Sequence record: LC680885.1 | Strand: one strand, 5' to 3' | DNA length: 64,000 nucleotides | Program-made: the position numbers and the translations under genes | Notes under the pieces: generated by a model | The model's input: the letters and a program-made list of their open reading frames with translations, nothing else | The model's database searches: none | What the model was told of the DNA's origin: nothing | In this document: in pieces, positions 5,539-11,869 of the stretch | Numbering within the stretch: position 1 is the first letter of the stretch | Layout of the letters: each line of letters starts with the position of its first letter

Positions 5539-6252
5539 TTAACCGAAATATAATTTCTTTCTGTTACTATTAAATATAGAATAATTTTCCATCTTTTCTA
5601 CTAACTCTCTACGTTTATCTCTTGCTTCACGTAAATCATCCATATTAAGATTTAATTCTCCAAAAGTAGTTTGTAAGCTCTGGAATCTACTTCTCATAGC
5701 ATATAATGATATTTGAACATCATAAGAAGCTAATTCTAAGAAATAGTCATGCATATTATTTGGTACAGAACCAAAATGTTTATCATGATAAGTATTCAGA
5801 ACGATTAGTAAATTAACAGAACCAATTACAGCAGAACTTAATATTTCTATTTTATTAGGATGGTGATATCTAAAAGTAGATGGTGATAAATTAATTGCCA
5901 TTAAGTCAGACATCATTTGACTATCTATAGGATTTCCCATAGCGAATCCTGCATAAGGACTCATATTACCTGCATAACCTGTTAAATTAGTAATAGGATT
6001 ATTAGCACCAATTACTCTATTAATATTAACTATAGGATTCTCAGAATCTATATAGAACATATTTGTAGTTCCTTCTACTTTATCTTCCGGTTTTATAATT
6101 ACTCTTTCTTGTTTAGGATGAAATTTACTAAATGTAGGAATAGTGAATCTTTCTACTGTTTTAATAATTTCATCAGGTTTTAATTCTAAATCAGTGAACA
6201 TGAAACCTACGTCACGTTCAATATAGTTAAGTATTTCTGTATTGGTTAACAT
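5539..6252 (-). CDS. Neck/head-completion protein (T4 gp13-like)
   Basis: 237 aa; N-terminal ILNYIERDVG...ELKPDEI and C-terminal GELNLNMDDLREARDKRRELVEKM pattern; downstream of the prohead protease. Confidence 0.5.
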   Translation of the reverse strand: MLTNTEILNYIERDVGFMFTDLELKPDEIIKTVERFTIPTFSKFHPKQERVIIKPEDKVEGTTNMFYIDSENPIVNINRVIGANNPITNLTGYAGNMSPYAGFAMGNPIDSQMMSDLMAINLSPSTFRYHHPNKIEILSSAVIGSVNLLIVLNTYHDKHFGSVPNNMHDYFLELASYDVQISLYAMRSRFQSLQTTFGELNLNMDDLREARDKRRELVEKMENYSIFNSNRKKLYFG

Positions 6253-6276
6253 AACCTTTAATCACATCCATACATA

Positions 6277-8290
6277 TTATTTAAAGTTTCTATAGAAATC
6301 ATCAAGTCCATTAAGAACAGATTCTTCTAAGAAAACTTTGATAGTTTTATTACTTTCTCTAATTGAAGCTAATTGAGAACCTTTATCATAACTGATATTA
6401 GATTCATCAACTCCAGCAAATCCCATATCTTCTGCAATGTATTTCACATTATCTGAATTTTCTTTAATATAAGTTAAAACTTCTCTAGGAGAGAATTCAG
6501 TAATTTTACCATTAGCAAACATATCAATTGATTCATTTACCATTTGTAAATCATTAGGATTATAGTTATTATGACCTTCTGAAATAATATTTTGAATATA
6601 AGAATCTTGATGAGATGGAATTACTACCCAATCATAACAAATTAATCTTAAAGGCTTAGTAACTTCAACTTCACCAGAAGGTGTTCTATTAATTTTACTG
6701 AAACCACGCATTGAGAAAGATACGTCAGATTTTTGTCCAATTAATCCTTTCATATCTTTACCAGCTGCAGTTTGAGCTGTTTCTACTTCTCCCATTAATT
6801 TATTACCATTCCACCAAGTTCTAGTAACAATATGAGAAATATTGCGTTGATCAATATACATTTGACGTTTAGGTTCATCACTTAAGGGATGTCCTGATTC
6901 CATTATCTTCATATAAGTTCGTTAGACTTATACCGTCTTAAAAAGACTGCTCTATAATTTCTATAGAAGATGAGACCATATCAAAATCCTTTATAAGAAC
7001 AAAGGACCTCTCAAATTTCGATTTCACTTGAAATCTACTCCCTATAGGGATGGTCGTTGAACTATCCAATTAAAGTTAAATCTTTCTTTCTACAATTACA
7101 AATTTTTGTATTATGGAAGTCACACATATTGTATCTTTCATATTTTATGTCATTGAAGTTTCTTGTAGGTTTATAACAAATACAAAATTTGTATTGATTT
7201 TCTTTAGGTATTAAATAGAAATAGGGTCTAAGTAAATCTAAAAAATCTAGTATATCGTCAAATTTTTTCATACCAATATCTTTTATTTTTCCTTTTTCTC
7301 TCATGACTTTAAAATTTAAATTAAATTTTTCATTAACTTCTTTAACGAATTTTTCAATATCTTCATCTCTATATGAAGCTAAAGTTATTTTTAATCTTCT
7401 ACTTAAAGTTGGTTTTCTATTATTTGGTCTCTTTTGATAACCCACTGAAAGTGAGCCATCATCGATATACCAGTATAATAGAACTAAAGGATCAATAAAA
7501 TTTATTTCTGGTAATTTTCTAGAATTATCTTCATATCTTGATATTTCAATCATATTACGAATTAATTCTTTCTCTTTTGAGCTTATACTAAATCTTAAAG
7601 TATTAAAATGACCTTTTCTTATCTTATTAGTTTTGTAATGCTCACTAATAATATTGTATTTTCTATTTATATATTCTACTTCTTTTATGGACTCTTGAGT
7701 AAATCCTAGAGATGGATTAATATTATTTCCTCTCGGAGTTTCTATATGTCCATCACCAAGTAGACTTCCTAAAATAATAGAATTAACTTTTTCTTTTTCC
7801 ATATTAATCATTCCCTTAATTTTATAATTATTTGTTAAGGGTGTCCTAATTAATAGGTAAAAGAGGATAGCTGCTGATTATCCATTATTAACAGTACTTA
7901 GGACCTTATATTATTAAATGTATAAAAATAATAAAAGGCTTTTATTTCACCATATACCATCTTAACTATTGTTTCTACTTTTCAGTAACCATTAAGGTTA
8001 GTTAAGCTTTAGGAGTTCCCAGCAATTAAAGAGATTTCGACACTATATTACTATAGTGAAGGGCAAATTCTACCATAAAAAGTTCTTCTTGCTAATTTTT
8101 CTTGTATTACTGGACTATCTAAACCACTTTGAATAACATCTTTACGATAAACACGACCATTACGGTTTTGTCTATCCGCTTCTTGTAACTCAGCAATGAA
8201 TCTAACCGATTTATTATTATCTTGAACCACTTCTGGTTGAGAAGTTGTATTAGATTCATTAATAAGATAAGCTTTTATATCTTTAGACAT
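6277..8290 (-). CDS. Prohead core protease (T4 gp21-like), spliced: exon 1 8290-8072, exon 2 6900-6277, 280 aa
   Basis: Exon 1 LQEADRQNRNGRVY...TFYG joins in frame to ESGHP...SHIV...GEVE...FSMRG...YDWVVIPSH, restoring the gp21 GExxHP and SxRG catalytic motifs. Confidence 0.9.
7062..7811 (-). CDS. Intron-encoded LAGLIDADG homing endonuclease (likely start at ATG 7802)
   Basis: Two motifs IILGSLLGDGHI and LLYWYIDDGSL; lies in the P6 loop and its stop abuts the P7 strand; AAGGGA RBS fits ATG 7802. Confidence 0.88.
   Translation of the reverse strand: MINMEKEKVNSIILGSLLGDGHIETPRGNNINPSLGFTQESIKEVEYINRKYNIISEHYKTNKIRKGHFNTLRFSISSKEKELIRNMIEISRYEDNSRKLPEINFIDPLVLLYWYIDDGSLSVGYQKRPNNRKPTLSRRLKITLASYRDEDIEKFVKEVNEKFNLNFKVMREKGKIKDIGMKKFDDILDFLDLLRPYFYLIPKENQYKFCICYKPTRNFNDIKYERYNMCDFHNTKICNCRKKDLTLIG
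7825..7836 (-). promoter_or_regulatory. Intron-internal late promoter for the endonuclease, inside an RBS-sequestering hairpin (7813-7841)
   Basis: AACAaataatTA lies between arms CCCTTAA and TTAAGGG; the 3' arm contains the RBS. Confidence 0.65.
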
Positions 8291-8324
8291 TTATTTAACT
8301 TCCTTTCACATATTAAATTTAGAA

Positions 8325-8336
8325 TATTTAAATGTT
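8325..8336 (-). promoter_or_regulatory. Putative late promoter for the protease operon
   Basis: AACAtttaaaTA on the minus strand, 35 nt upstream of the protease start. Confidence 0.6.
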
Positions 8337-8350
8337 TGATAAGCAATTTT

Positions 8351-8362
8351 AACAATAGAATA
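8351..8362 (+). promoter_or_regulatory. Putative late promoter for the head operon
   Basis: AACAatagaaTA 28 nt upstream of ORF 8391. Confidence 0.6.
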
Positions 8363-8390
8363 TTAACCTTAATGAAAATATGAATAGGAT

Positions 8391-9422
8391 GTGAAATACT
8401 TGAAGAATTTCAATGAAGTAGAAAGTGAATTAAAATATTTCATAGAACAAACAGATAACGATTCTTTTCCTGTTGATTTATATGATAAATTAATTGATAT
8501 TGAAAAGTATGCAGATGTAGATTCTTTTACAAGTGATCAAGTTAGGAAATCGGTTAAATATCTTGTTGCTTTAAAAGATTCACTAGAAAGATTTGAAATT
8601 GAAAATGAACAGTCTGAAATGGCAGTTAATATGGTTCTTCATAAAATAGAATTTTTAAAAGATAAGTATAATACTCTTTATATTAATAAACGTGTTCCAA
8701 ATAATGGTTACATAGATAATTTATATAAAGAAGATTTCAGTTCTAATATTAATACAGAATTTAATTTTAAACAATTAACTGTAGCATTAGCTGAAAGCCC
8801 TGCTGATTCTAAACTAGAAAGAAAAGCTGTTATTAATTTCTTAATGGAAGGTAATATGAATTATCTTAATGAAGCTTATGACAATGAAGCTTATGACGAT
8901 GATGATGAAGATTATCTTGATGGTCTTGATAGTAGTTTTGAAACTTCTAAAGAACCTAAAGTTGCTGAAAAGAATTTAAATAGATTAATTGGTTCTGTTA
9001 AAAAAGCAACCGCTTCTTCTAAAAATATGAATGATAAACAATTAGCTAAAGCTAATCGCATTAGATTTGTAAGAGCTTTATTAACTGGAATTTTATTCTG
9101 TATCGGTTTAAAAATTAGTTCAGCAGCTATTGGTAAAGCTAAAACAGCTTTAATAGGGTTATTGACTGTAATTGTTTATAATGCAAGTAAAGGTAATGAA
9201 CTTAATAGACTTATCATTGTATTAGAAGAAAGAATCCAAACTTTAGAGAATAGAATTGATTCGACTGATGATGGAGAAAAGAGAAAAGAATTAAGAATAT
9301 TAAAATCAGATTTAGAAGGTCAACTTAAGAAAGCTAATTTCCAAAAGAAATCTATTGAGAAAACTAAAAATGCGATTTCTCGTGGAGATGTAAACGATAG
9401 TGGGTCAGCGTATGACTATTAA
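8391..9422 (+). CDS. Putative internal head/ejection protein
   Basis: 343 aa; acidic propeptide-like N-half with LNE-A sites, two hydrophobic helices, C-terminal coiled coil; head cluster. Confidence 0.4.
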   Translation: MKYLKNFNEVESELKYFIEQTDNDSFPVDLYDKLIDIEKYADVDSFTSDQVRKSVKYLVALKDSLERFEIENEQSEMAVNMVLHKIEFLKDKYNTLYINKRVPNNGYIDNLYKEDFSSNINTEFNFKQLTVALAESPADSKLERKAVINFLMEGNMNYLNEAYDNEAYDDDDEDYLDGLDSSFETSKEPKVAEKNLNRLIGSVKKATASSKNMNDKQLAKANRIRFVRALLTGILFCIGLKISSAAIGKAKTALIGLLTVIVYNASKGNELNRLIIVLEERIQTLENRIDSTDDGEKRKELRILKSDLEGQLKKANFQKKSIEKTKNAISRGDVNDSGSAYDY

Positions 9423-10086
9423 TAATAGAGATCTTTTATCTGAATCAATTAAAAAATTATTAAATGGTAATAATATTCTTAATGAAGCTGAAGATGATGA
9501 AACTAATAATGATTCTTCAGATACTAATACAGATGATACAAGTTCGGAAGATACTACTAATGATAATGAAGAATCTTCAGAAGAAAATTCAGAAACAGAA
9601 GAAGATAATCAAGATGATAGTAATGAAGATGATTCTAGTACAGATGACTCTGAAAGTGATTCAGAATTAGATGATGGTTCAGAAGAGAATTCAGATGAAG
9701 ACAATCCTTTAGACGATCAATCTGAAGAAGAAAATAATGAACCTAAAGAAACTAATTCTGATAAATATTTAAAATTACAAATATTTAATAAATTAAATGA
9801 TTTAATAGATGTTTCATTAAAATTTAAAGATATTGTAAATGAAAAGAATATGGAATCTTTTGATAAAAATGAAAAAGAAAAAATGAGTGAAATTACAGTA
9901 CAGACTTCAAATAATTTAGACAGTTTAATTGATAGTATTAATTTATTTAACAATAAATTTATAAATAATATTGATGCTGATAAATGTGAGAAACTTTATA
10001 AGAAGTTTGAAAATACTTATAATGAAATCTTCAATATTTATTTAAAAGAATACAATAAATTGAATAAAGACAAAAAAAGCAAATAG
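9400..10086 (+). CDS. Putative prohead scaffold/core protein
   Basis: 228 aa with an ~85 aa D/E/S/N-rich tract, immediately upstream of the major capsid gene; start could be GTG 9400 or ATG 9412. Confidence 0.5.
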   Translation: MGQRMTINNRDLLSESIKKLLNGNNILNEAEDDETNNDSSDTNTDDTSSEDTTNDNEESSEENSETEEDNQDDSNEDDSSTDDSESDSELDDGSEENSDEDNPLDDQSEEENNEPKETNSDKYLKLQIFNKLNDLIDVSLKFKDIVNEKNMESFDKNEKEKMSEITVQTSNNLDSLIDSINLFNNKFINNIDADKCEKLYKKFENTYNEIFNIYLKEYNKLNKDKKSK

Positions 10087-10264: not shown

Positions 10265-11869
10265 ATGTTAAACCCAAACAGAATTAAAGATGAATTTTCG
10301 GTTCGTTTAGAAGATATCGAAAACTCTATTAATGAATCATATAACCTTAGTACTATCGGCGGAGATTTCGCTGCTATTGCTACTGACGATGCAGTATTTG
10401 AAAGCTATAAAGATCAATTATTAGAAGGTTTTGACGCTGCTGAAGGAGAAGCTTTAGCTGGAATGTTAGATAATACTCGTGAAGAAATCTTAATGGAATC
10501 TTCAATGGGACCTATCCAACCTTACGCTTCACTTTCTATGCCTATTTTAGTTAAACTTTGGGCTCGTTTAGCTTTAACTGAAGCTTTACCAACTCAAGTT
10601 GCTAACAAACCAAACTTTACAGTTCCAATCTTAACTCCATATGTTGTGGATGCAGATGGTAACAAACATGCTTTACCAGAATCAATTAACAATACACCTG
10701 AAACTTTAGTTGGATTAGTTCAAATTAAAGAAGATATCGCAGTTGAAGGTGGAAAAGTTACTGATTACGATTTATTTACTGGATTAAAAGAAGGTAAAGA
10801 AGTTCGTAAAGGTATTGACCGTTTAGATCGTAAATTCAAAATCGTTGAAGCTAAATGGAGTGATTCATTCGATGAACGTACTTCAGCTGCAGGATTCGTT
10901 GAATTAGGTTCTAATGTAGTTAAATTACAAGACAATGATACATTAGTAGGACAAATTAAATACCCTACAAATGGTGATGGTGAAGTTGAAACTGATACTA
11001 TCTTAGGTAAAGTAGATGTTTCTTCAGGTGAACTTACTTTGACTTCTGCTTCAGGTAAATTAACTGATGTTAAAGTTAAAGGTTATGTAGCTTCTGAACA
11101 ACATACTTCAGCTACAAACGTTGAACTTGGTTTAACTCGTAAAGACGTTGTTATTGATACAGCTCAACACATCGAAGCTACAGTACCTCTTGAAGTAATT
11201 CAAGATATGAAAGCTACTTACGATATCGATGGAGTTGCTCGTTTATCTGAAACTATGTCTCAATTATCTAGTCAAAAAGTTGACTTAGACATTATTGAAT
11301 TCTTAGATCACGAATATAAAGAAACTGATGCTAAATATCACTTCAGCTTCGATGTATTCCCACATAGTGATTACAGTGCTCACCCTAAAGATTGGTTAGA
11401 AGGTCTACGTGAAGTAATTGACCACACTACTCAATCAATGAAAAACGATTACAAACTATATGACGTTCAATTCGTTATCGTTGGTAACCCATTAGATGTT
11501 CGTTTAATCCCTAACGTTTCTTGGACTTTCAATGGTGGAGACCGTAACGCTGATGCTTATTCTAACGGAATCAAAATTAACTATTCATTAGGTGCTGCTT
11601 CAGGTACTGCTAACTACCGTATTATCGGTTCTGACTTAGTTCGTCAAGGTGAATTGACTATTATTGCAATTCCTCAACAAGACAACTATAAAACATTCAT
11701 GTTCTACCCTTACACATTCAACGTTGTAAATGGTGGAGGTTACCTAAATACTCGTAACCCTAATGTTCCTAACATGATGATGACTCGTAGATATACAGTT
11801 GAATCATTTGTTCCGATCATTGGACGTATTACAATCAAAAACAACAACGGTTCAGTATACGCTCGATAA
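10265..11869 (+). CDS. Major capsid protein (HK97 fold, T4 gp23-like)
   Basis: 534 aa; IQPYASLSMPILVKLWARLALTEALPTQVANKP resembles the gp23 N-arm/E-loop start; strong RBS; high-expression codons; downstream terminator. Confidence 0.85.
   Translation: MLNPNRIKDEFSVRLEDIENSINESYNLSTIGGDFAAIATDDAVFESYKDQLLEGFDAAEGEALAGMLDNTREEILMESSMGPIQPYASLSMPILVKLWARLALTEALPTQVANKPNFTVPILTPYVVDADGNKHALPESINNTPETLVGLVQIKEDIAVEGGKVTDYDLFTGLKEGKEVRKGIDRLDRKFKIVEAKWSDSFDERTSAAGFVELGSNVVKLQDNDTLVGQIKYPTNGDGEVETDTILGKVDVSSGELTLTSASGKLTDVKVKGYVASEQHTSATNVELGLTRKDVVIDTAQHIEATVPLEVIQDMKATYDIDGVARLSETMSQLSSQKVDLDIIEFLDHEYKETDAKYHFSFDVFPHSDYSAHPKDWLEGLREVIDHTTQSMKNDYKLYDVQFVIVGNPLDVRLIPNVSWTFNGGDRNADAYSNGIKINYSLGAASGTANYRIIGSDLVRQGELTIIAIPQQDNYKTFMFYPYTFNVVNGGGYLNTRNPNVPNMMMTRRYTVESFVPIIGRITIKNNNGSVYAR

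What the first reader, a model, noticed from the sequence alone, without database searches (positions are those of the whole stretch)
6277..8290. Prohead protease split by a LAGLIDADG group I intron right before the catalytic His motif
Seen: splicing 8072 to 6900 gives YG|ESGHP. The P1 pairing (UGGU exon with GCC), the P10 pairing (AUUU with exon-2 GAAU), the GUAA-capped P2 and P7 GACCA/UGGUC (a compensatory variant of GACUA/UAGUC) are all present. Knowledge: phage group I introns usually sit in DNA-metabolism genes and mostly carry HNH or GIY-YIG nucleases; LAGLIDADG is typical of organellar/archaeal elements. Inference: capsid maturation depends on splicing, and the two ORF-track fragments are one gene.
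Basis: partly seen in the sequence, partly recalled or inferred. Interest (0 to 1): 0.7.

Follow-up and report, generated by a model that had tools for sequence, protein, structure and literature searches.

The report
Group I intron splitting phage protease gene

Summary
The window is Staphylococcus jumbo phage S6. On the minus strand, exon 1 (8290..8072) and exon 2 (6900..6277) flank a 1171-nt insert (8071..6901). Removing the insert gives an 843-nt ORF whose protein is identical to the uninterrupted gene of phage PALS_2.

The joined protein is a T4 gp21-like prohead protease (Pfam S77, 36.9 bits). The insert lies between Gly73 and Glu74, three codons before His77, which aligns with the catalytic His85 of T4 gp21.

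The insert is an IA2-like group I intron:
- The last exon base is U and the last intron base is G.
- A covariance model built from 35 other phage introns hits the window once (7062..6945, 75.9 bits, E 2.8e-12).
- Thirty-eight of 73 proposed base pairs show compensatory changes among seven related introns.

The P6 loop holds an I-SceI-like LAGLIDADG nuclease ORF (7802..7062).

The finding is not new. GenBank annotates the 95.5%-identical MarsHill copy as a joined protease gene with a LAGLIDADG nuclease, Korn et al. list this gene as intron-disrupted, and phage AR9 has a homologous ORF-less intron 9 nt downstream.

Side finding: relatives carry 154–184-nt mini-introns in the same gene, separated by micro-exons of 6 and 11 nt.

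The parts
8072..8290 (-). Exon 1 of the prohead protease gene (codons 1-73, ending ...TAT GGT)
   Evidence: Collinear with PALS_2 CDS nt 1-219; matches PHROG 31489 head maturation protease, E 7e-13.
6901..8071 (-). Group I intron, 1171 nt, IA2-like. Starts AGAAUUUGCC, ends ...AUAAUG (last G at 6901).
   Evidence: Absent from PALS_2, DC4 and SA1. Obeys the U|...G| rule. Model R1 hit. Seven-intron covariation.
8051..8053 (-). In-frame stop (TAG) seven codons into the intron, inside the 5' strand of P2; it ends translation that reads through from exon 1
   Evidence: ORF 8051..8290 ends ...FYGRICPSL*.
8062..8068 (-). Internal guide sequence AUUUGCC. GCC pairs with exon-1 GGU (P1); AUUU pairs with exon-2 GAAU (P10).
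   Evidence: Seven contiguous pairs with the ligated exons GGU|GAAU. P1 is invariant and P10 covaries with exon 2 in seven introns.
8041..8058 (-). P2 hairpin CACUAUA-GUAA-UAUAGUG
   Evidence: Recovered in the minimum-energy fold. All 7 pairs show compensatory changes and 100% of cells are paired.
8029..8034 (-). P3 5' strand UCUCUU (pairs with GAGAGG at 7012..7007)
   Evidence: 87.5% of cells paired, 4 of 6 pairs compensatory.
7872..8024 (-). P4 (UGCUGG 8024..8019 with UCAGCA 7877..7872) enclosing P5 and a large P5 extension
   Evidence: P4 is invariant in 7 introns. The fold recovers P4, P5 and the extension. The 5' part of the intron is 68.7% identical over 188 nt (E 2e-14) to the Listeria phage LPJP1 rpoB intron, which passes the Rfam RF00028 gathering score at 58.9 bits.
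7865..7870 (-). P6 5' strand CUAUCC (pairs with GGAUAG at 7067..7062); the nuclease ORF lies in the P6 loop
   Evidence: P6 covaries: S6 CUAUCC/GGAUAG, L132 a 13-bp stem, AR9 a 10-bp stem.
7790..7864 (-). Hairpin that base-pairs the Shine-Dalgarno-like AAGGGA and both candidate AUGs of the nuclease ORF
   Evidence: -18.2 kcal/mol against -7.5 for shuffles, z -4.76, 0 of 200 shuffles as stable. The three MarsHill differences here are one C-to-U opposite a G and two in loops.
7062..7802 (-). LAGLIDADG homing endonuclease ORF (246 aa from AUG 7802; 249 aa if from AUG 7811). Its stop codon UAG (7064..7062) lies in the 3' strand of P6.
   Evidence: PF03161, E 2e-19. PHROG 11023. I-SceI structures, E 2.5e-6, with the second motif YWYIDDG aligned to YWFMDDG. 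MarsHill ortholog 93% identical.
6945..7062 (-). Catalytic 3' domain: J6/7 UUCAAC; P7 GACCA (7055..7051) with UGGUC (6978..6974); P7.1 (7050..7039); P7.2 (7035..7020); P3 3' strand (7012..7007); P8 (7006..6987); J8/7 (6986..6979); P9 (6967..6951)
   Evidence: R1: 75.9 bits, E 2.8e-12, full model, no non-standard pair. Rfam RF00028 truncated match, 18.9 bits, E 0.006. The fold recovers all helices.
6901..6947 (-). P9.1 (6947..6935), P9.2 (6931..6913) and the tail AUGAAGAUAAUG ending in the terminal G
   Evidence: The same architecture is seen in AR9, LPJP1, L132 and L134.
6277..6900 (-). Exon 2 (codons 74-280). His77 codon 6891..6889, Ser136 codon 6714..6712, Asp163 codon 6633..6631.
   Evidence: Collinear with PALS_2 CDS nt 220-843. 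Peptidase_S77. Aligns to 5JBL. Residue numbers.

Best explanation
The insert is a mobile group I intron of the phage IA2 type. It lies between codons 73 and 74 of a T4 gp21-like prohead (head-maturation) serine protease gene.

Splicing. The gene is transcribed as one pre-mRNA. Ribosomes that read through from exon 1 stop at a UAG seven codons into the intron. The RNA folds into the P3-P8 core with P7.1/P7.2. The guide sequence AUUUGCC holds exon 1 (GGU, with the U·G pair at the cut) and exon 2 (GAAU). An exogenous guanosine attacks after U8072, then the freed exon 1 attacks after G6901. This joins GGU|GAA and restores the motif YGESGHP, which contains the catalytic His77.

Mobility. The P6 loop encodes a monomeric, I-SceI-like LAGLIDADG endonuclease. 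Its ribosome-binding site and start codon are buried in a stable hairpin. In a mixed infection the enzyme is expected to cut an intron-less protease allele near the insertion point, in uracil-containing phage DNA. The break is then repaired from the intron-bearing copy, which spreads the intron (homing).

Shown here by computation: the precise insertion, the splice-site rules, the conserved and covarying ribozyme structure, the protein families, and the link between this nuclease lineage and this gene.

Inferred, not shown: splicing itself and whether it is unaided, nuclease activity and target, translational control by the hairpin, and the dependence of head maturation on splicing.
For: Precise insertion relative to three intron-less alleles; the spliced protein is identical to that of PALS_2.

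Ribozyme:
- U before and G at the end of the insert.
- R1 model, built from 35 other phage introns, hits only this site in the window: 75.9 bits, E 2.8e-12.
- Thirteen introns in the loci that supplied R1's training sequences pass the Rfam RF00028 gathering score. One is L042, which has the same GACCA/UGGUC P7.
- The S6 3' half alone gives a truncated RF00028 match, E 0.006.
- The 5' half is homologous to the RF00028-positive LPJP1 and Goslar introns.
- In seven related introns 92.4% of cells are paired against 40-45% in slid controls. Thirty-eight of 73 pairs have compensatory changes, and P10 covaries with exon 2.
- The RNA parts are more conserved between S6 and MarsHill (14 differences in 421 nt) than the ORF (56 in 750).

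Proteins: protease assignment and catalytic residues; nuclease family.

Nuclease lineage tied to this gene:
- Only 11 homologs were found in 5.8 billion proteins.
- P0001 is the MarsHill ortholog.
- The three whose contigs I read (P0002, P0005, P0011) all sit in an intron of this same gene.

Other:
- Start-site hairpin, z -4.76.
- Intron-less alleles differ from S6 by clustered synonymous changes at the site: 5 of the 8 PALS_2 differences fall in CDS nt 222-228, and DC4 differs at nt 216 and 219.
- S6 has U-DNA (PMC8150378).
Against: - No RNA or biochemical data for S6 were available.
- Rfam finds nothing in the whole window or in the 5' half. The 808-nt P6 loop and the large P5 extension explain this, but it means the curated threshold is not met by S6 itself.
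- P1 is only 3 bp.
- Thermodynamic z-scores of the two RNA halves are unremarkable.
- The structure scored was derived from S6, which favours it over the slid controls. Only seven sequences were used and two are near-identical.
- P7 complementarity was a selection criterion for the R1 training set, so the 100% pairing of that helix is by construction.
Confidence: 0.92

Rival explanations
1. The intron is real but does not self-splice efficiently. The LAGLIDADG protein, or a host or phage factor, acts as a maturase needed to fold the AT-rich ribozyme with its 3-bp P1.
For: P1 is only 3 bp. Folding energies are no better than shuffles. LAGLIDADG proteins with maturase activity are known, including one in a bacterial 23S rRNA intron (PMC3984707).
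Against: The homologous AR9 and LPJP1 introns have the same GGU/GCC P1 and no ORF, so an intron-encoded protein cannot be obligatory for the family. The nuclease start site is sequestered in a hairpin, which fits poorly with a protein needed in stoichiometric amounts for splicing.
Confidence: 0.08
2. The nuclease ORF is a decaying or inactive passenger: the intron persists by vertical descent and no longer homes.
For: The ORF diverges faster than the RNA between S6 and MarsHill (7.5% against 3.3%). ORF-less derivatives are common in relatives. All three intron-less alleles already differ at the presumed target, so few susceptible targets may remain.
Against: The ORF is intact in S6, MarsHill and at least three divergent metagenomic phages at 51-74% identity, with both LAGLIDADG motifs and their acidic residues retained. 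This indicates purifying selection on the protein.
Confidence: 0.2
3. There is no splicing. A nuclease cassette split the gene into two separately translated polypeptides that assemble, as with the split RNA polymerase genes of these phages. Exon 2 would start at the in-frame AUG at 6912.
For: ORF 6277..6912 begins with an in-frame AUG, giving MKIM-ESGHP. Split genes are common in this phage group.
Against: A complete, covarying ribozyme surrounds the ORF. There is no Shine-Dalgarno sequence upstream of 6912. The same conserved AUGAAGAU in AR9 is out of frame with exon 2, and in LPJP1 it is GUGAAGGU, so it is an RNA element and not a start codon. ORF-less mini-introns in relatives leave fragments as short as 6 nt, which cannot be independent genes.
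Confidence: 0.02

Closest known systems
Staphylococcus phage MarsHill CPT_MarsHill_065/064 (MW248466.1; Korn et al., bioRxiv 10.1101/2020.12.14.422802)
   Same: Orthologous locus, 95.5% identical over 2.2 kb. Same insertion site, same intron, nuclease 93% identical. It is annotated as a joined 'prohead core scaffold and protease' CDS with an internal 'LAGLIDADG homing endonuclease'. The paper lists the gene as intron-disrupted.
   Different: There the exon junction was predicted from a protein alignment only. In the text I could read, no intron class, RNA structure or splice-site reasoning is given. The S6 record itself calls all five ORFs hypothetical.
Bacillus phage AR9 / PBS1 g114 intron (KU878088.1)
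   Same: Same gene, a homologous intron (70% identity over 160 nt of the 3' domain), the same GGU/GCC P1 and the same helix set. R1 scores it 94.3 bits, but AR9 is one of R1's training sequences.
   Different: ORF-less and 345 nt long. It is inserted 9 nt further downstream (GGT|CAC), directly before the His codon. Its guide sequence is changed (GGGUUGCC) to match its own exon 2. Rfam misses it even at E<=1.
T4 td intron with I-TevI (recalled from memory, not tested here)
   Same: A phage IA2 group I intron with P7.1/P7.2, the nuclease ORF looped out of P6, and nuclease translation restrained by an RNA hairpin over the ribosome-binding site. It is inserted at codons of a conserved active-site region.
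   Different: I-TevI is a GIY-YIG enzyme and the host gene is for nucleotide metabolism. Here the nuclease is LAGLIDADG, the host gene is a virion-assembly protease and the DNA contains uracil.
I-SceI (PDB 1R7M, 3OOR)
   Same: The best solved relative of the ORF (E 2.5e-6). It is a monomeric two-motif LAGLIDADG enzyme of similar length, encoded in a group I intron.
   Different: It is from yeast mitochondrial 21S rRNA. Only the second half aligns confidently. The target and activity of the S6 protein are unknown.
LAGLIDADG-bearing group I intron in a Bastillevirinae (Nitunavirus) DNA polymerase gene (PMC11878797)
   Same: Same PHROG (11023) of LAGLIDADG nuclease inside a phage group I intron.
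   Different: A different host gene (DNA polymerase) and phage group. That study also reports that Rfam gives only partial hits when a nuclease ORF splits the ribozyme, as seen here.

Membership tests
Group I intron | 5' splice site follows a U that forms a U·G pair with the internal guide (P1) | tested here: met
   Exon 1 ends GGU. GCC at 8064..8062 pairs G-C, G-C, U·G. The pairing is invariant in 7 related introns.
Group I intron | Last intron nucleotide is G | tested here: met
   G at 6901. It is the only frame-preserving junction that also has U at -1.
Group I intron | Conserved catalytic core: P3-P8 with the P7 helix (R and S elements), J6/7 and J8/7 | tested here: met
   R1: 75.9 bits, E 2.8e-12. 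GUUCAACGACCA and GAUAUGGUC are present. P3, P7 and P8 covary.
Group I intron | P4-P6 domain | tested here: met
   P4 UGCUGG/UCAGCA is invariant; P5 and P6 covary. The region is homologous to the RF00028-positive LPJP1 and Goslar introns.
Group I intron | Score at or above the Rfam RF00028 gathering threshold (operational criterion) | tested here: inconclusive
   No hit on the window or the 5' half. The 3' half alone scores 18.9 bits against a threshold of 50, E 0.006, truncated. The 808-nt P6 loop cannot be spanned by the model. ORF-less relatives score 58-98 bits.
Group I intron | Guanosine-dependent self-splicing | not testable with these tools
   Needs in vitro transcription and splicing, or RT-PCR.
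Group I intron, subgroup IA2 | Extra helices P7.1 and P7.2 between P7 and the 3' strand of P3 | tested here: met
   UCCC-UAUA-GGGA (7050..7039) and GAUUUC-AAGU-GAAAUC (7035..7020). Both covary in 35 introns. That these helices define IA2 is recalled knowledge, consistent with PMC3984707.
LAGLIDADG homing endonuclease | LAGLIDADG fold with two motifs, each carrying an acidic catalytic residue | tested here: met
   PF03161, 70.5 bits against a cut-off of 25. Motifs LGSLLGDGHI and LLYWYIDDGS. The second aligns to the I-SceI motif.
LAGLIDADG homing endonuclease | Encoded within a self-splicing element, separate from the host reading frame | tested here: met
   The ORF lies in the P6 loop. The exon-1 frame stops at 8053..8051, and the ORF starts at 7802 with its own SD-like AAGGGA.
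LAGLIDADG homing endonuclease | Site-specific cleavage of the intron-less allele | not testable with these tools
   Indirect only: the lineage is found only in this gene, and synonymous changes cluster at the site in intron-less alleles.
Peptidase S77 (T4 gp21-like prohead protease) | Pfam PF03420 at or above the gathering score on the full-length protein | tested here: met
   36.9 bits against 27 on the PALS_2 protein, which is identical to spliced S6. Exon 2 alone scores 20.5 bits, below the cut-off.
Peptidase S77 (T4 gp21-like prohead protease) | Catalytic His and Ser conserved | tested here: met
   His77 and Ser136 align to the two Ala positions of the 5JBL chain. These correspond to residues 85 and 140 after a 19-residue tag (their identity as His85 and Ser140 is recalled). 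The alignment E-value is weak (0.018).
Intein (considered and rejected) | In-frame protein insertion without stop codons | tested here: not met
   The exon-1 frame hits UAG after 7 codons, and the nuclease ORF is a separate cistron.
Group II intron (considered and rejected) | Domain V / RF00029-type RNA and a reverse-transcriptase ORF | tested here: not met
   No Rfam hit of that kind. The ORF is a LAGLIDADG protein, not a reverse transcriptase.

The most novel reading that the evidence does not exclude
The active-site codons of the prohead protease gene are an invasion hot spot for group I introns in this jumbo-phage clade. I found six insertion points in two clusters:
- After CDS nt 219, 223 and the AR9 site at +9, all around His77.
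- After nt 483, 489 and 494, around the conserved Asp163.

Most occupants are ORF-less mini-introns of only 154-184 nt. They lack P7.1/P7.2 and in some cases P2, and have almost no P8. Rfam does not detect them. Some are separated by micro-exons of 6 nt (LY01) or 11 nt (AH12, Machias), which must serve as P10 partner of one intron and P1 partner of the next.

If these RNAs splice unaided, they would be smaller than the smallest natural self-splicing group I intron I can recall (Azoarcus tRNA-Ile, about 205 nt; from memory, not checked). They would also impose an order on splicing.

For S6 itself, the unexcluded novelty is a LAGLIDADG enzyme whose natural substrate is uracil-DNA.
Probability: 0.45. 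Interest if true: 0.6.

Novelty: already known. Interest (0 to 1): 0.3.

Why it matters
For S6, the practical result is a corrected annotation. Three of the five 'hypothetical' ORFs under the match resolve into one essential head-maturation protease gene plus a homing endonuclease gene.

Biologically it is a clean example of a known rule: mobile introns and their nucleases settle on the codons of catalytic residues, where the target cannot easily mutate away.

Three points go beyond the existing annotation of MarsHill.

1. The intron is now placed in a defined, covarying group I family, with an exact junction that can be tested by RT-PCR.
2. Standard Rfam screening is blind to these introns. 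It misses S6, the ORF-less AR9 copy and all the mini-introns. Intron surveys of jumbo phages that rely on Rfam, such as the one in the DC4 paper, will therefore under-count.
3. S6 carries uracil-DNA. Its LAGLIDADG enzyme is thus a natural candidate for studying how this widely engineered nuclease family reads DNA that lacks thymine methyl groups.

Tried and rejected
Searches that found nothing:
- Rfam on the whole window at gathering threshold: nothing.
- Rfam in E-value mode on 6700..8300: only chance-level sRNA/miRNA matches.
- Rfam on the 5' half alone: nothing.
- Rfam on the relatives' mini-introns and on AR9: nothing.

Weak or uninformative tests:
- A count of the R-element motif in the window is uninformative: 1 found, 1.3 expected.
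- Folding-energy z-scores of the two ribozyme halves are not significant: -0.77 and -1.61.
- NCBIfam has no model for either protein.
- My first idea for P9 (AUCUUC/GAAGAU closing the whole 3' tail) was dropped. AR9 lacks the complementary strand and the two MarsHill changes there are not compensatory.

Literature:
- The AR9 genome paper (PMC13189113) and the journal version of Korn et al. (PMC8428398) are not held. I could not check whether the AR9 g114 junction was mapped experimentally.
- A text search for the smallest known group I intron and for the T4 gp21 catalytic residues returned nothing.

Rejected readings: intein, group II intron and 'two separate polypeptides' (see the membership tests and rivals).

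Script failures: a first attempt to pull family 3' domains by script had an indexing error, corrected. Searches also failed and were rerun.
Full report
IDENTITY OF THE WINDOW AND THE OBSERVATION. The region 6200..8400 is 100% identical, at the same coordinates, to Staphylococcus phage S6 (LC680885.1). S6 is a 267-kb jumbo phage, and its record calls all five ORFs under the match 'hypothetical'. The gene lies on the minus strand. ORF 8290..8051 (79 aa) and ORF 6912..6277 (211 aa) flank ORF 7811..7062 (249 aa).

Nine sister phages match the region. PALS_2, DC4 and SA1 carry the gene as one uninterrupted 843-nt ORF. Aligning S6 to PALS_2 places the insert between 8072 and 6900. Joining those two positions gives an 843-nt ORF with no internal stop, and its protein is identical to that of PALS_2. 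A one-base slide of both boundaries gives the same protein. Only 8072/6900 leaves a U as the last exon base and a G (6901) as the last intron base.

THE HOST GENE. The full-length protein matches three sources:
- Pfam Peptidase_S77 above the curated cut-off (36.9 against 27 bits).
- PHROG head-maturation-protease families (E 4e-24).
- Weakly, the T4 gp21 structure 5JBL (E 0.018).

In the 5JBL alignment, His77 (GESGHP) and Ser136 (SFSMRG) fall on the two alanines of the crystallised chain. After a 19-residue tag these are residues 85 and 140. From memory, those are the catalytic His85 and Ser140, mutated to inactivate the enzyme. The intron thus sits between Gly73 and Glu74, three codons before the catalytic histidine. 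Both catalytic residues are in exon 2 and the first 73 residues are in exon 1. An active full-length protease therefore requires joining of the exons. That is an inference.

THE INSERT IS A GROUP I INTRON. Rfam finds nothing in the whole window or in 6700..8300. The reason is architectural: the ribozyme is split by an 808-nt P6 loop and has a large P5 extension. Given only the 3' half (7072..6893), Rfam's Intron_gpI is the top match as a 5'-truncated alignment. It scores 18.9 bits, E 0.006, below the gathering score.

I then looked for relatives. The 3' part is 70% identical to an intron in the same gene of Bacillus phages AR9 and PBS1. The 5' part is 68.7% identical over 188 nt to an intron in rpoB of Listeria phage LPJP1, and matches an annotated Intron_gpI of phage Goslar. 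LPJP1 and Goslar both pass the Rfam gathering score (58.9 and 67.7 bits). The motif TTAATTGCTGGRAACTCCT (P3/J3-4/P4/P5) occurs in more than 114 viral contigs.

From those loci and AR9, I aligned 35 3' domains, excluding S6 and MarsHill. The proposed helices P7, P7.1, P7.2, P8 and P9 are paired in 99.3% of cells, against 32-42% when partners are slid. Nineteen of 24 pairs have compensatory changes. P7 complementarity was a selection criterion, so that helix's 100% is by construction.

The covariance model R1 built from this alignment hits the 64-kb window exactly once. The hit is at 7062..6945 on the minus strand, over the full model, at 75.9 bits and E 2.8e-12, with no non-standard pair. Thirteen introns in the loci that supplied the training sequences pass the Rfam gathering score (58-98 bits). 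One is L042, which has the same P7 variant as S6, GACCA/UGGUC.

WHOLE-INTRON STRUCTURE. By hand, checked against folding and coordinates, the structure is:
- P1: GGU/GCC.
- P10: AUUU/GAAU.
- P2: CACUAUA-GUAA-UAUAGUG.
- P3: UCUCUU/GAGAGG.
- P4: UGCUGG/UCAGCA.
- P5 with a long extension.
- P6: CUAUCC/GGAUAG, enclosing the ORF.
- J6/7: UUCAAC.
- P7: GACCA/UGGUC.
- P7.1, P7.2, P8, P9, P9.1 and P9.2, then the terminal G.

P7.1 and P7.2 between P7 and the 3' strand of P3 mark the IA2 type typical of phages.

I scored this structure on an alignment of seven introns: S6, MarsHill, three metagenomic relatives, AR9 and LPJP1, with ORFs removed. 92.4% of cells pair, against 40-45% for slid partners. Thirty-eight of 73 pairs have changes on both sides. 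All seven P2 pairs covary. The fourth P7 pair is U-A in four sequences and C-G in three. P1 is invariant, and P10 changes together with exon 2.

The guide sequences make the same point directly:
- S6 and L132: AUUU-GCC with exon 2 GAAU.
- L135: CUUU-GCC with GAAG.
- LPJP1: AUUUU-GCCG with GAAAU.
- AR9: AGGGUUGCC, which by hand pairs ACCCU of exon 2 beyond one C/U mismatch next to the splice junction. The contiguous-only script scores AR9's P10 as 0-1 bp.

Caveats: the structure was derived from S6, only seven sequences were used, and two of them are nearly identical.

Between S6 and MarsHill, the RNA parts differ at 14 of 421 positions and the ORF at 56 of 750. An in-frame UAG (8053..8051) stops read-through from exon 1. 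This feature is noted for many group I introns in protein genes (PMC3984707).

THE ORF. It matches LAGLIDADG_2 (E 2e-19), PHROG 11023 and I-SceI structures (E 2.5e-6). In the I-SceI alignment YWYIDDG aligns to YWFMDDG. Both motifs (LGSLLGDGHI and LLYWYIDDGS) keep their acidic residues. The likely start is AUG 7802, 9 nt after AAGGGA, as annotated in MarsHill.

The 75 nt around the start fold into a hairpin that pairs the ribosome-binding site and both AUGs. It is far more stable than shuffles (z -4.76). The three MarsHill differences in it are one wobble-compatible change and two loop changes. I read this as restraint of nuclease translation, by analogy with T4 I-TevI (from memory). It is not shown.

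Only S6, MarsHill and, distantly, BpSp match by tblastn in 50,697 phage records. Only 11 proteins match in the 5.8-billion-protein collection. One of them (P0001) is the MarsHill ortholog. The three whose contigs I read lie in this same gene of uncultured relatives:
- L132 (P0002): same site (TATGGT|...|GAATCC).
- L135/L136 (P0005): same site.
- L134 (P0011): the AR9 site, GGT|CAT.

Each of these has an R1-positive ribozyme (72-97 bits). The nuclease lineage is therefore tied to this target.

SIGNS OF HOMING PRESSURE. PALS_2 differs from S6 at 8 of 843 exon positions. Five of them lie in nt 222-228, immediately 3' of the insertion point (219|220), and all are synonymous. They include a Ser codon switch, TCA to AGT, that cannot arise by single synonymous steps. 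DC4 shares S6's downstream sequence but differs at nt 216 and 219 (TAC GGG), which removes the splice-site U. SA1 resembles PALS_2. Co-conversion of flanks with the intron, or selection of cleavage-resistant alleles, would explain this. Neither is demonstrated.

WHAT IS ALREADY KNOWN. GenBank annotates MarsHill (95.5% identical here) with a two-piece 'prohead core scaffold and protease' CDS and an internal 'LAGLIDADG homing endonuclease'. The junction there was predicted by alignment to the AR9 protein. Korn et al. list the prohead scaffold/protease among intron-disrupted genes of MarsHill, Madawaska, Machias and AR9. AR9 g114 is annotated as a joined CDS. LAGLIDADG nucleases of the same PHROG occur in a Bastillevirinae group I intron.

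The review literature does say that phage introns mostly carry GIY-YIG, HNH, PD-(D/E)xK or EDxHD enzymes, and that nucleases target codons of critical residues. What this analysis adds is the intron class, the structure, the exact junction and the family context.

SIDE OBSERVATIONS IN RELATIVES. Madawaska, PB50, LY01, AH12 and Machias lack the S6 intron. Instead they carry ORF-less introns of 154-184 nt after CDS nt 223, 483, 489 or 494. Removing them under the U/G rule restores an 843-nt ORF that is 261-278/280 identical to PALS_2. Each has canonical R and S elements and a guide sequence matching its own exons. R1 detects them weakly (27-40 bits) and Rfam not at all.

LY01 has a 6-nt micro-exon and AH12/Machias an 11-nt one between two introns. 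The Machias record joins only three exons where four are needed. With the AR9 site, this makes six insertion points in two clusters. One cluster is around His77. The other is around Asp163, which aligns with an Asp of T4 gp21.

S6 is one of the few phages known to carry uracil-DNA (PMC8150378), so the nuclease's natural substrate lacks thymine methyl groups.

VERDICT. Confidence is 0.92 that this is a spliced group I intron with a LAGLIDADG homing nuclease inside a gp21-like protease gene. It is already known through the MarsHill annotation and publication, so overall interest is modest (0.3). The mini-introns and the Rfam blind spot are the parts worth following.

Noticed in passing
L003:834-988 and 1255-1438; L004:834-997 and 1264-1443; L005:836-989, 1250-1430 and 1437-1620; L007:834-987, 1248-1426 and 1438-1596; L008:829-982, 1243-1421 and 1433-1591: Relatives of S6 carry ORF-less mini group I introns of 154-184 nt in the same protease gene, at four further sites (after CDS nt 223, 483, 489, 494). 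Removing them restores a full 843-nt ORF. Each guide sequence matches its own exons. Rfam misses them; my model R1 scores them at 27-40 bits.
   Followed up: partly
L005:1431-1436 (TACGAT); L007:1427-1437 and L008:1422-1432 (TATGACTGGGT): Micro-exons of 6 and 11 nt lie between two adjacent mini-introns. The guide of the upstream LY01 intron pairs with all six micro-exon bases, which also form P1 of the downstream intron. Splicing order may therefore be constrained.
   Followed up: partly
L135:2534-3707 and L136 (same sequence): A metagenomic copy of the S6-type intron, seen in two samples. The only frame-preserving junction puts an A, not a G, at the last intron position (...AGTTATA|GAAGCTGGG), although P1, P10 and P7 look intact.
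   Followed up: no
L010:1082-1426 (minus strand), AR9: The homologous ORF-less intron of AR9 is inserted 9 nt downstream of the S6 site, directly before the His codon. L134 has a LAGLIDADG-bearing intron at that AR9 site. The same intron/nuclease family therefore occupies two sites within one presumed recognition sequence. Rfam does not detect the AR9 intron even at E<=1.
   Followed up: partly
window 6892-6898 and 6901-flanking exon bases; CDS nt 216-228 in L001, L006, L009: Intron-less alleles differ from S6 by clustered synonymous changes right at the insertion point (5 of 8 differences for PALS_2; TAC GGG in DC4). This suggests co-conversion or nuclease-resistant variants.
   Followed up: partly
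L008 (Machias CPT_Machias_065); L004 (PB50 WPH64110-WPH64112); L005 and L007: Annotation problems in public records. The Machias join has three exons where four are needed. PB50 exon fragments are labelled 'terminase large subunit' and 'homing endonuclease'. In LY01, AH12 and S6 the fragments are 'hypothetical'.
   Followed up: partly
L014:176-1491 (Bacillus phage vB_BpuM-BpSp, 192 kb region): Four R1-positive group I 3' domains lie within 1.5 kb of a stretch with no annotated gene. This is probably another heavily interrupted gene.
   Followed up: no
window 7790-7864 (minus strand): A very stable hairpin (z -4.76) buries the ribosome-binding site and both start codons of the nuclease ORF.
   Followed up: partly
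window 9400-10086 (+) and 10265-11869 (+): An extremely acidic Asp/Glu/Ser/Asn-rich 228-aa ORF lies just upstream of a gp23-like major capsid gene (Pfam Gp23, 21.2 bits, below cut-off). It may be a scaffold or internal head protein and a likely substrate of the protease.
   Followed up: no
window 5539-6252 (minus strand): The ORF downstream of the protease has only sub-threshold Pfam matches (ABC_toxin_N, 18.3 bits against a cut-off of 27; DUF7484). I treat these as chance. The SA1 record calls the ortholog a virion protein.
   Followed up: no
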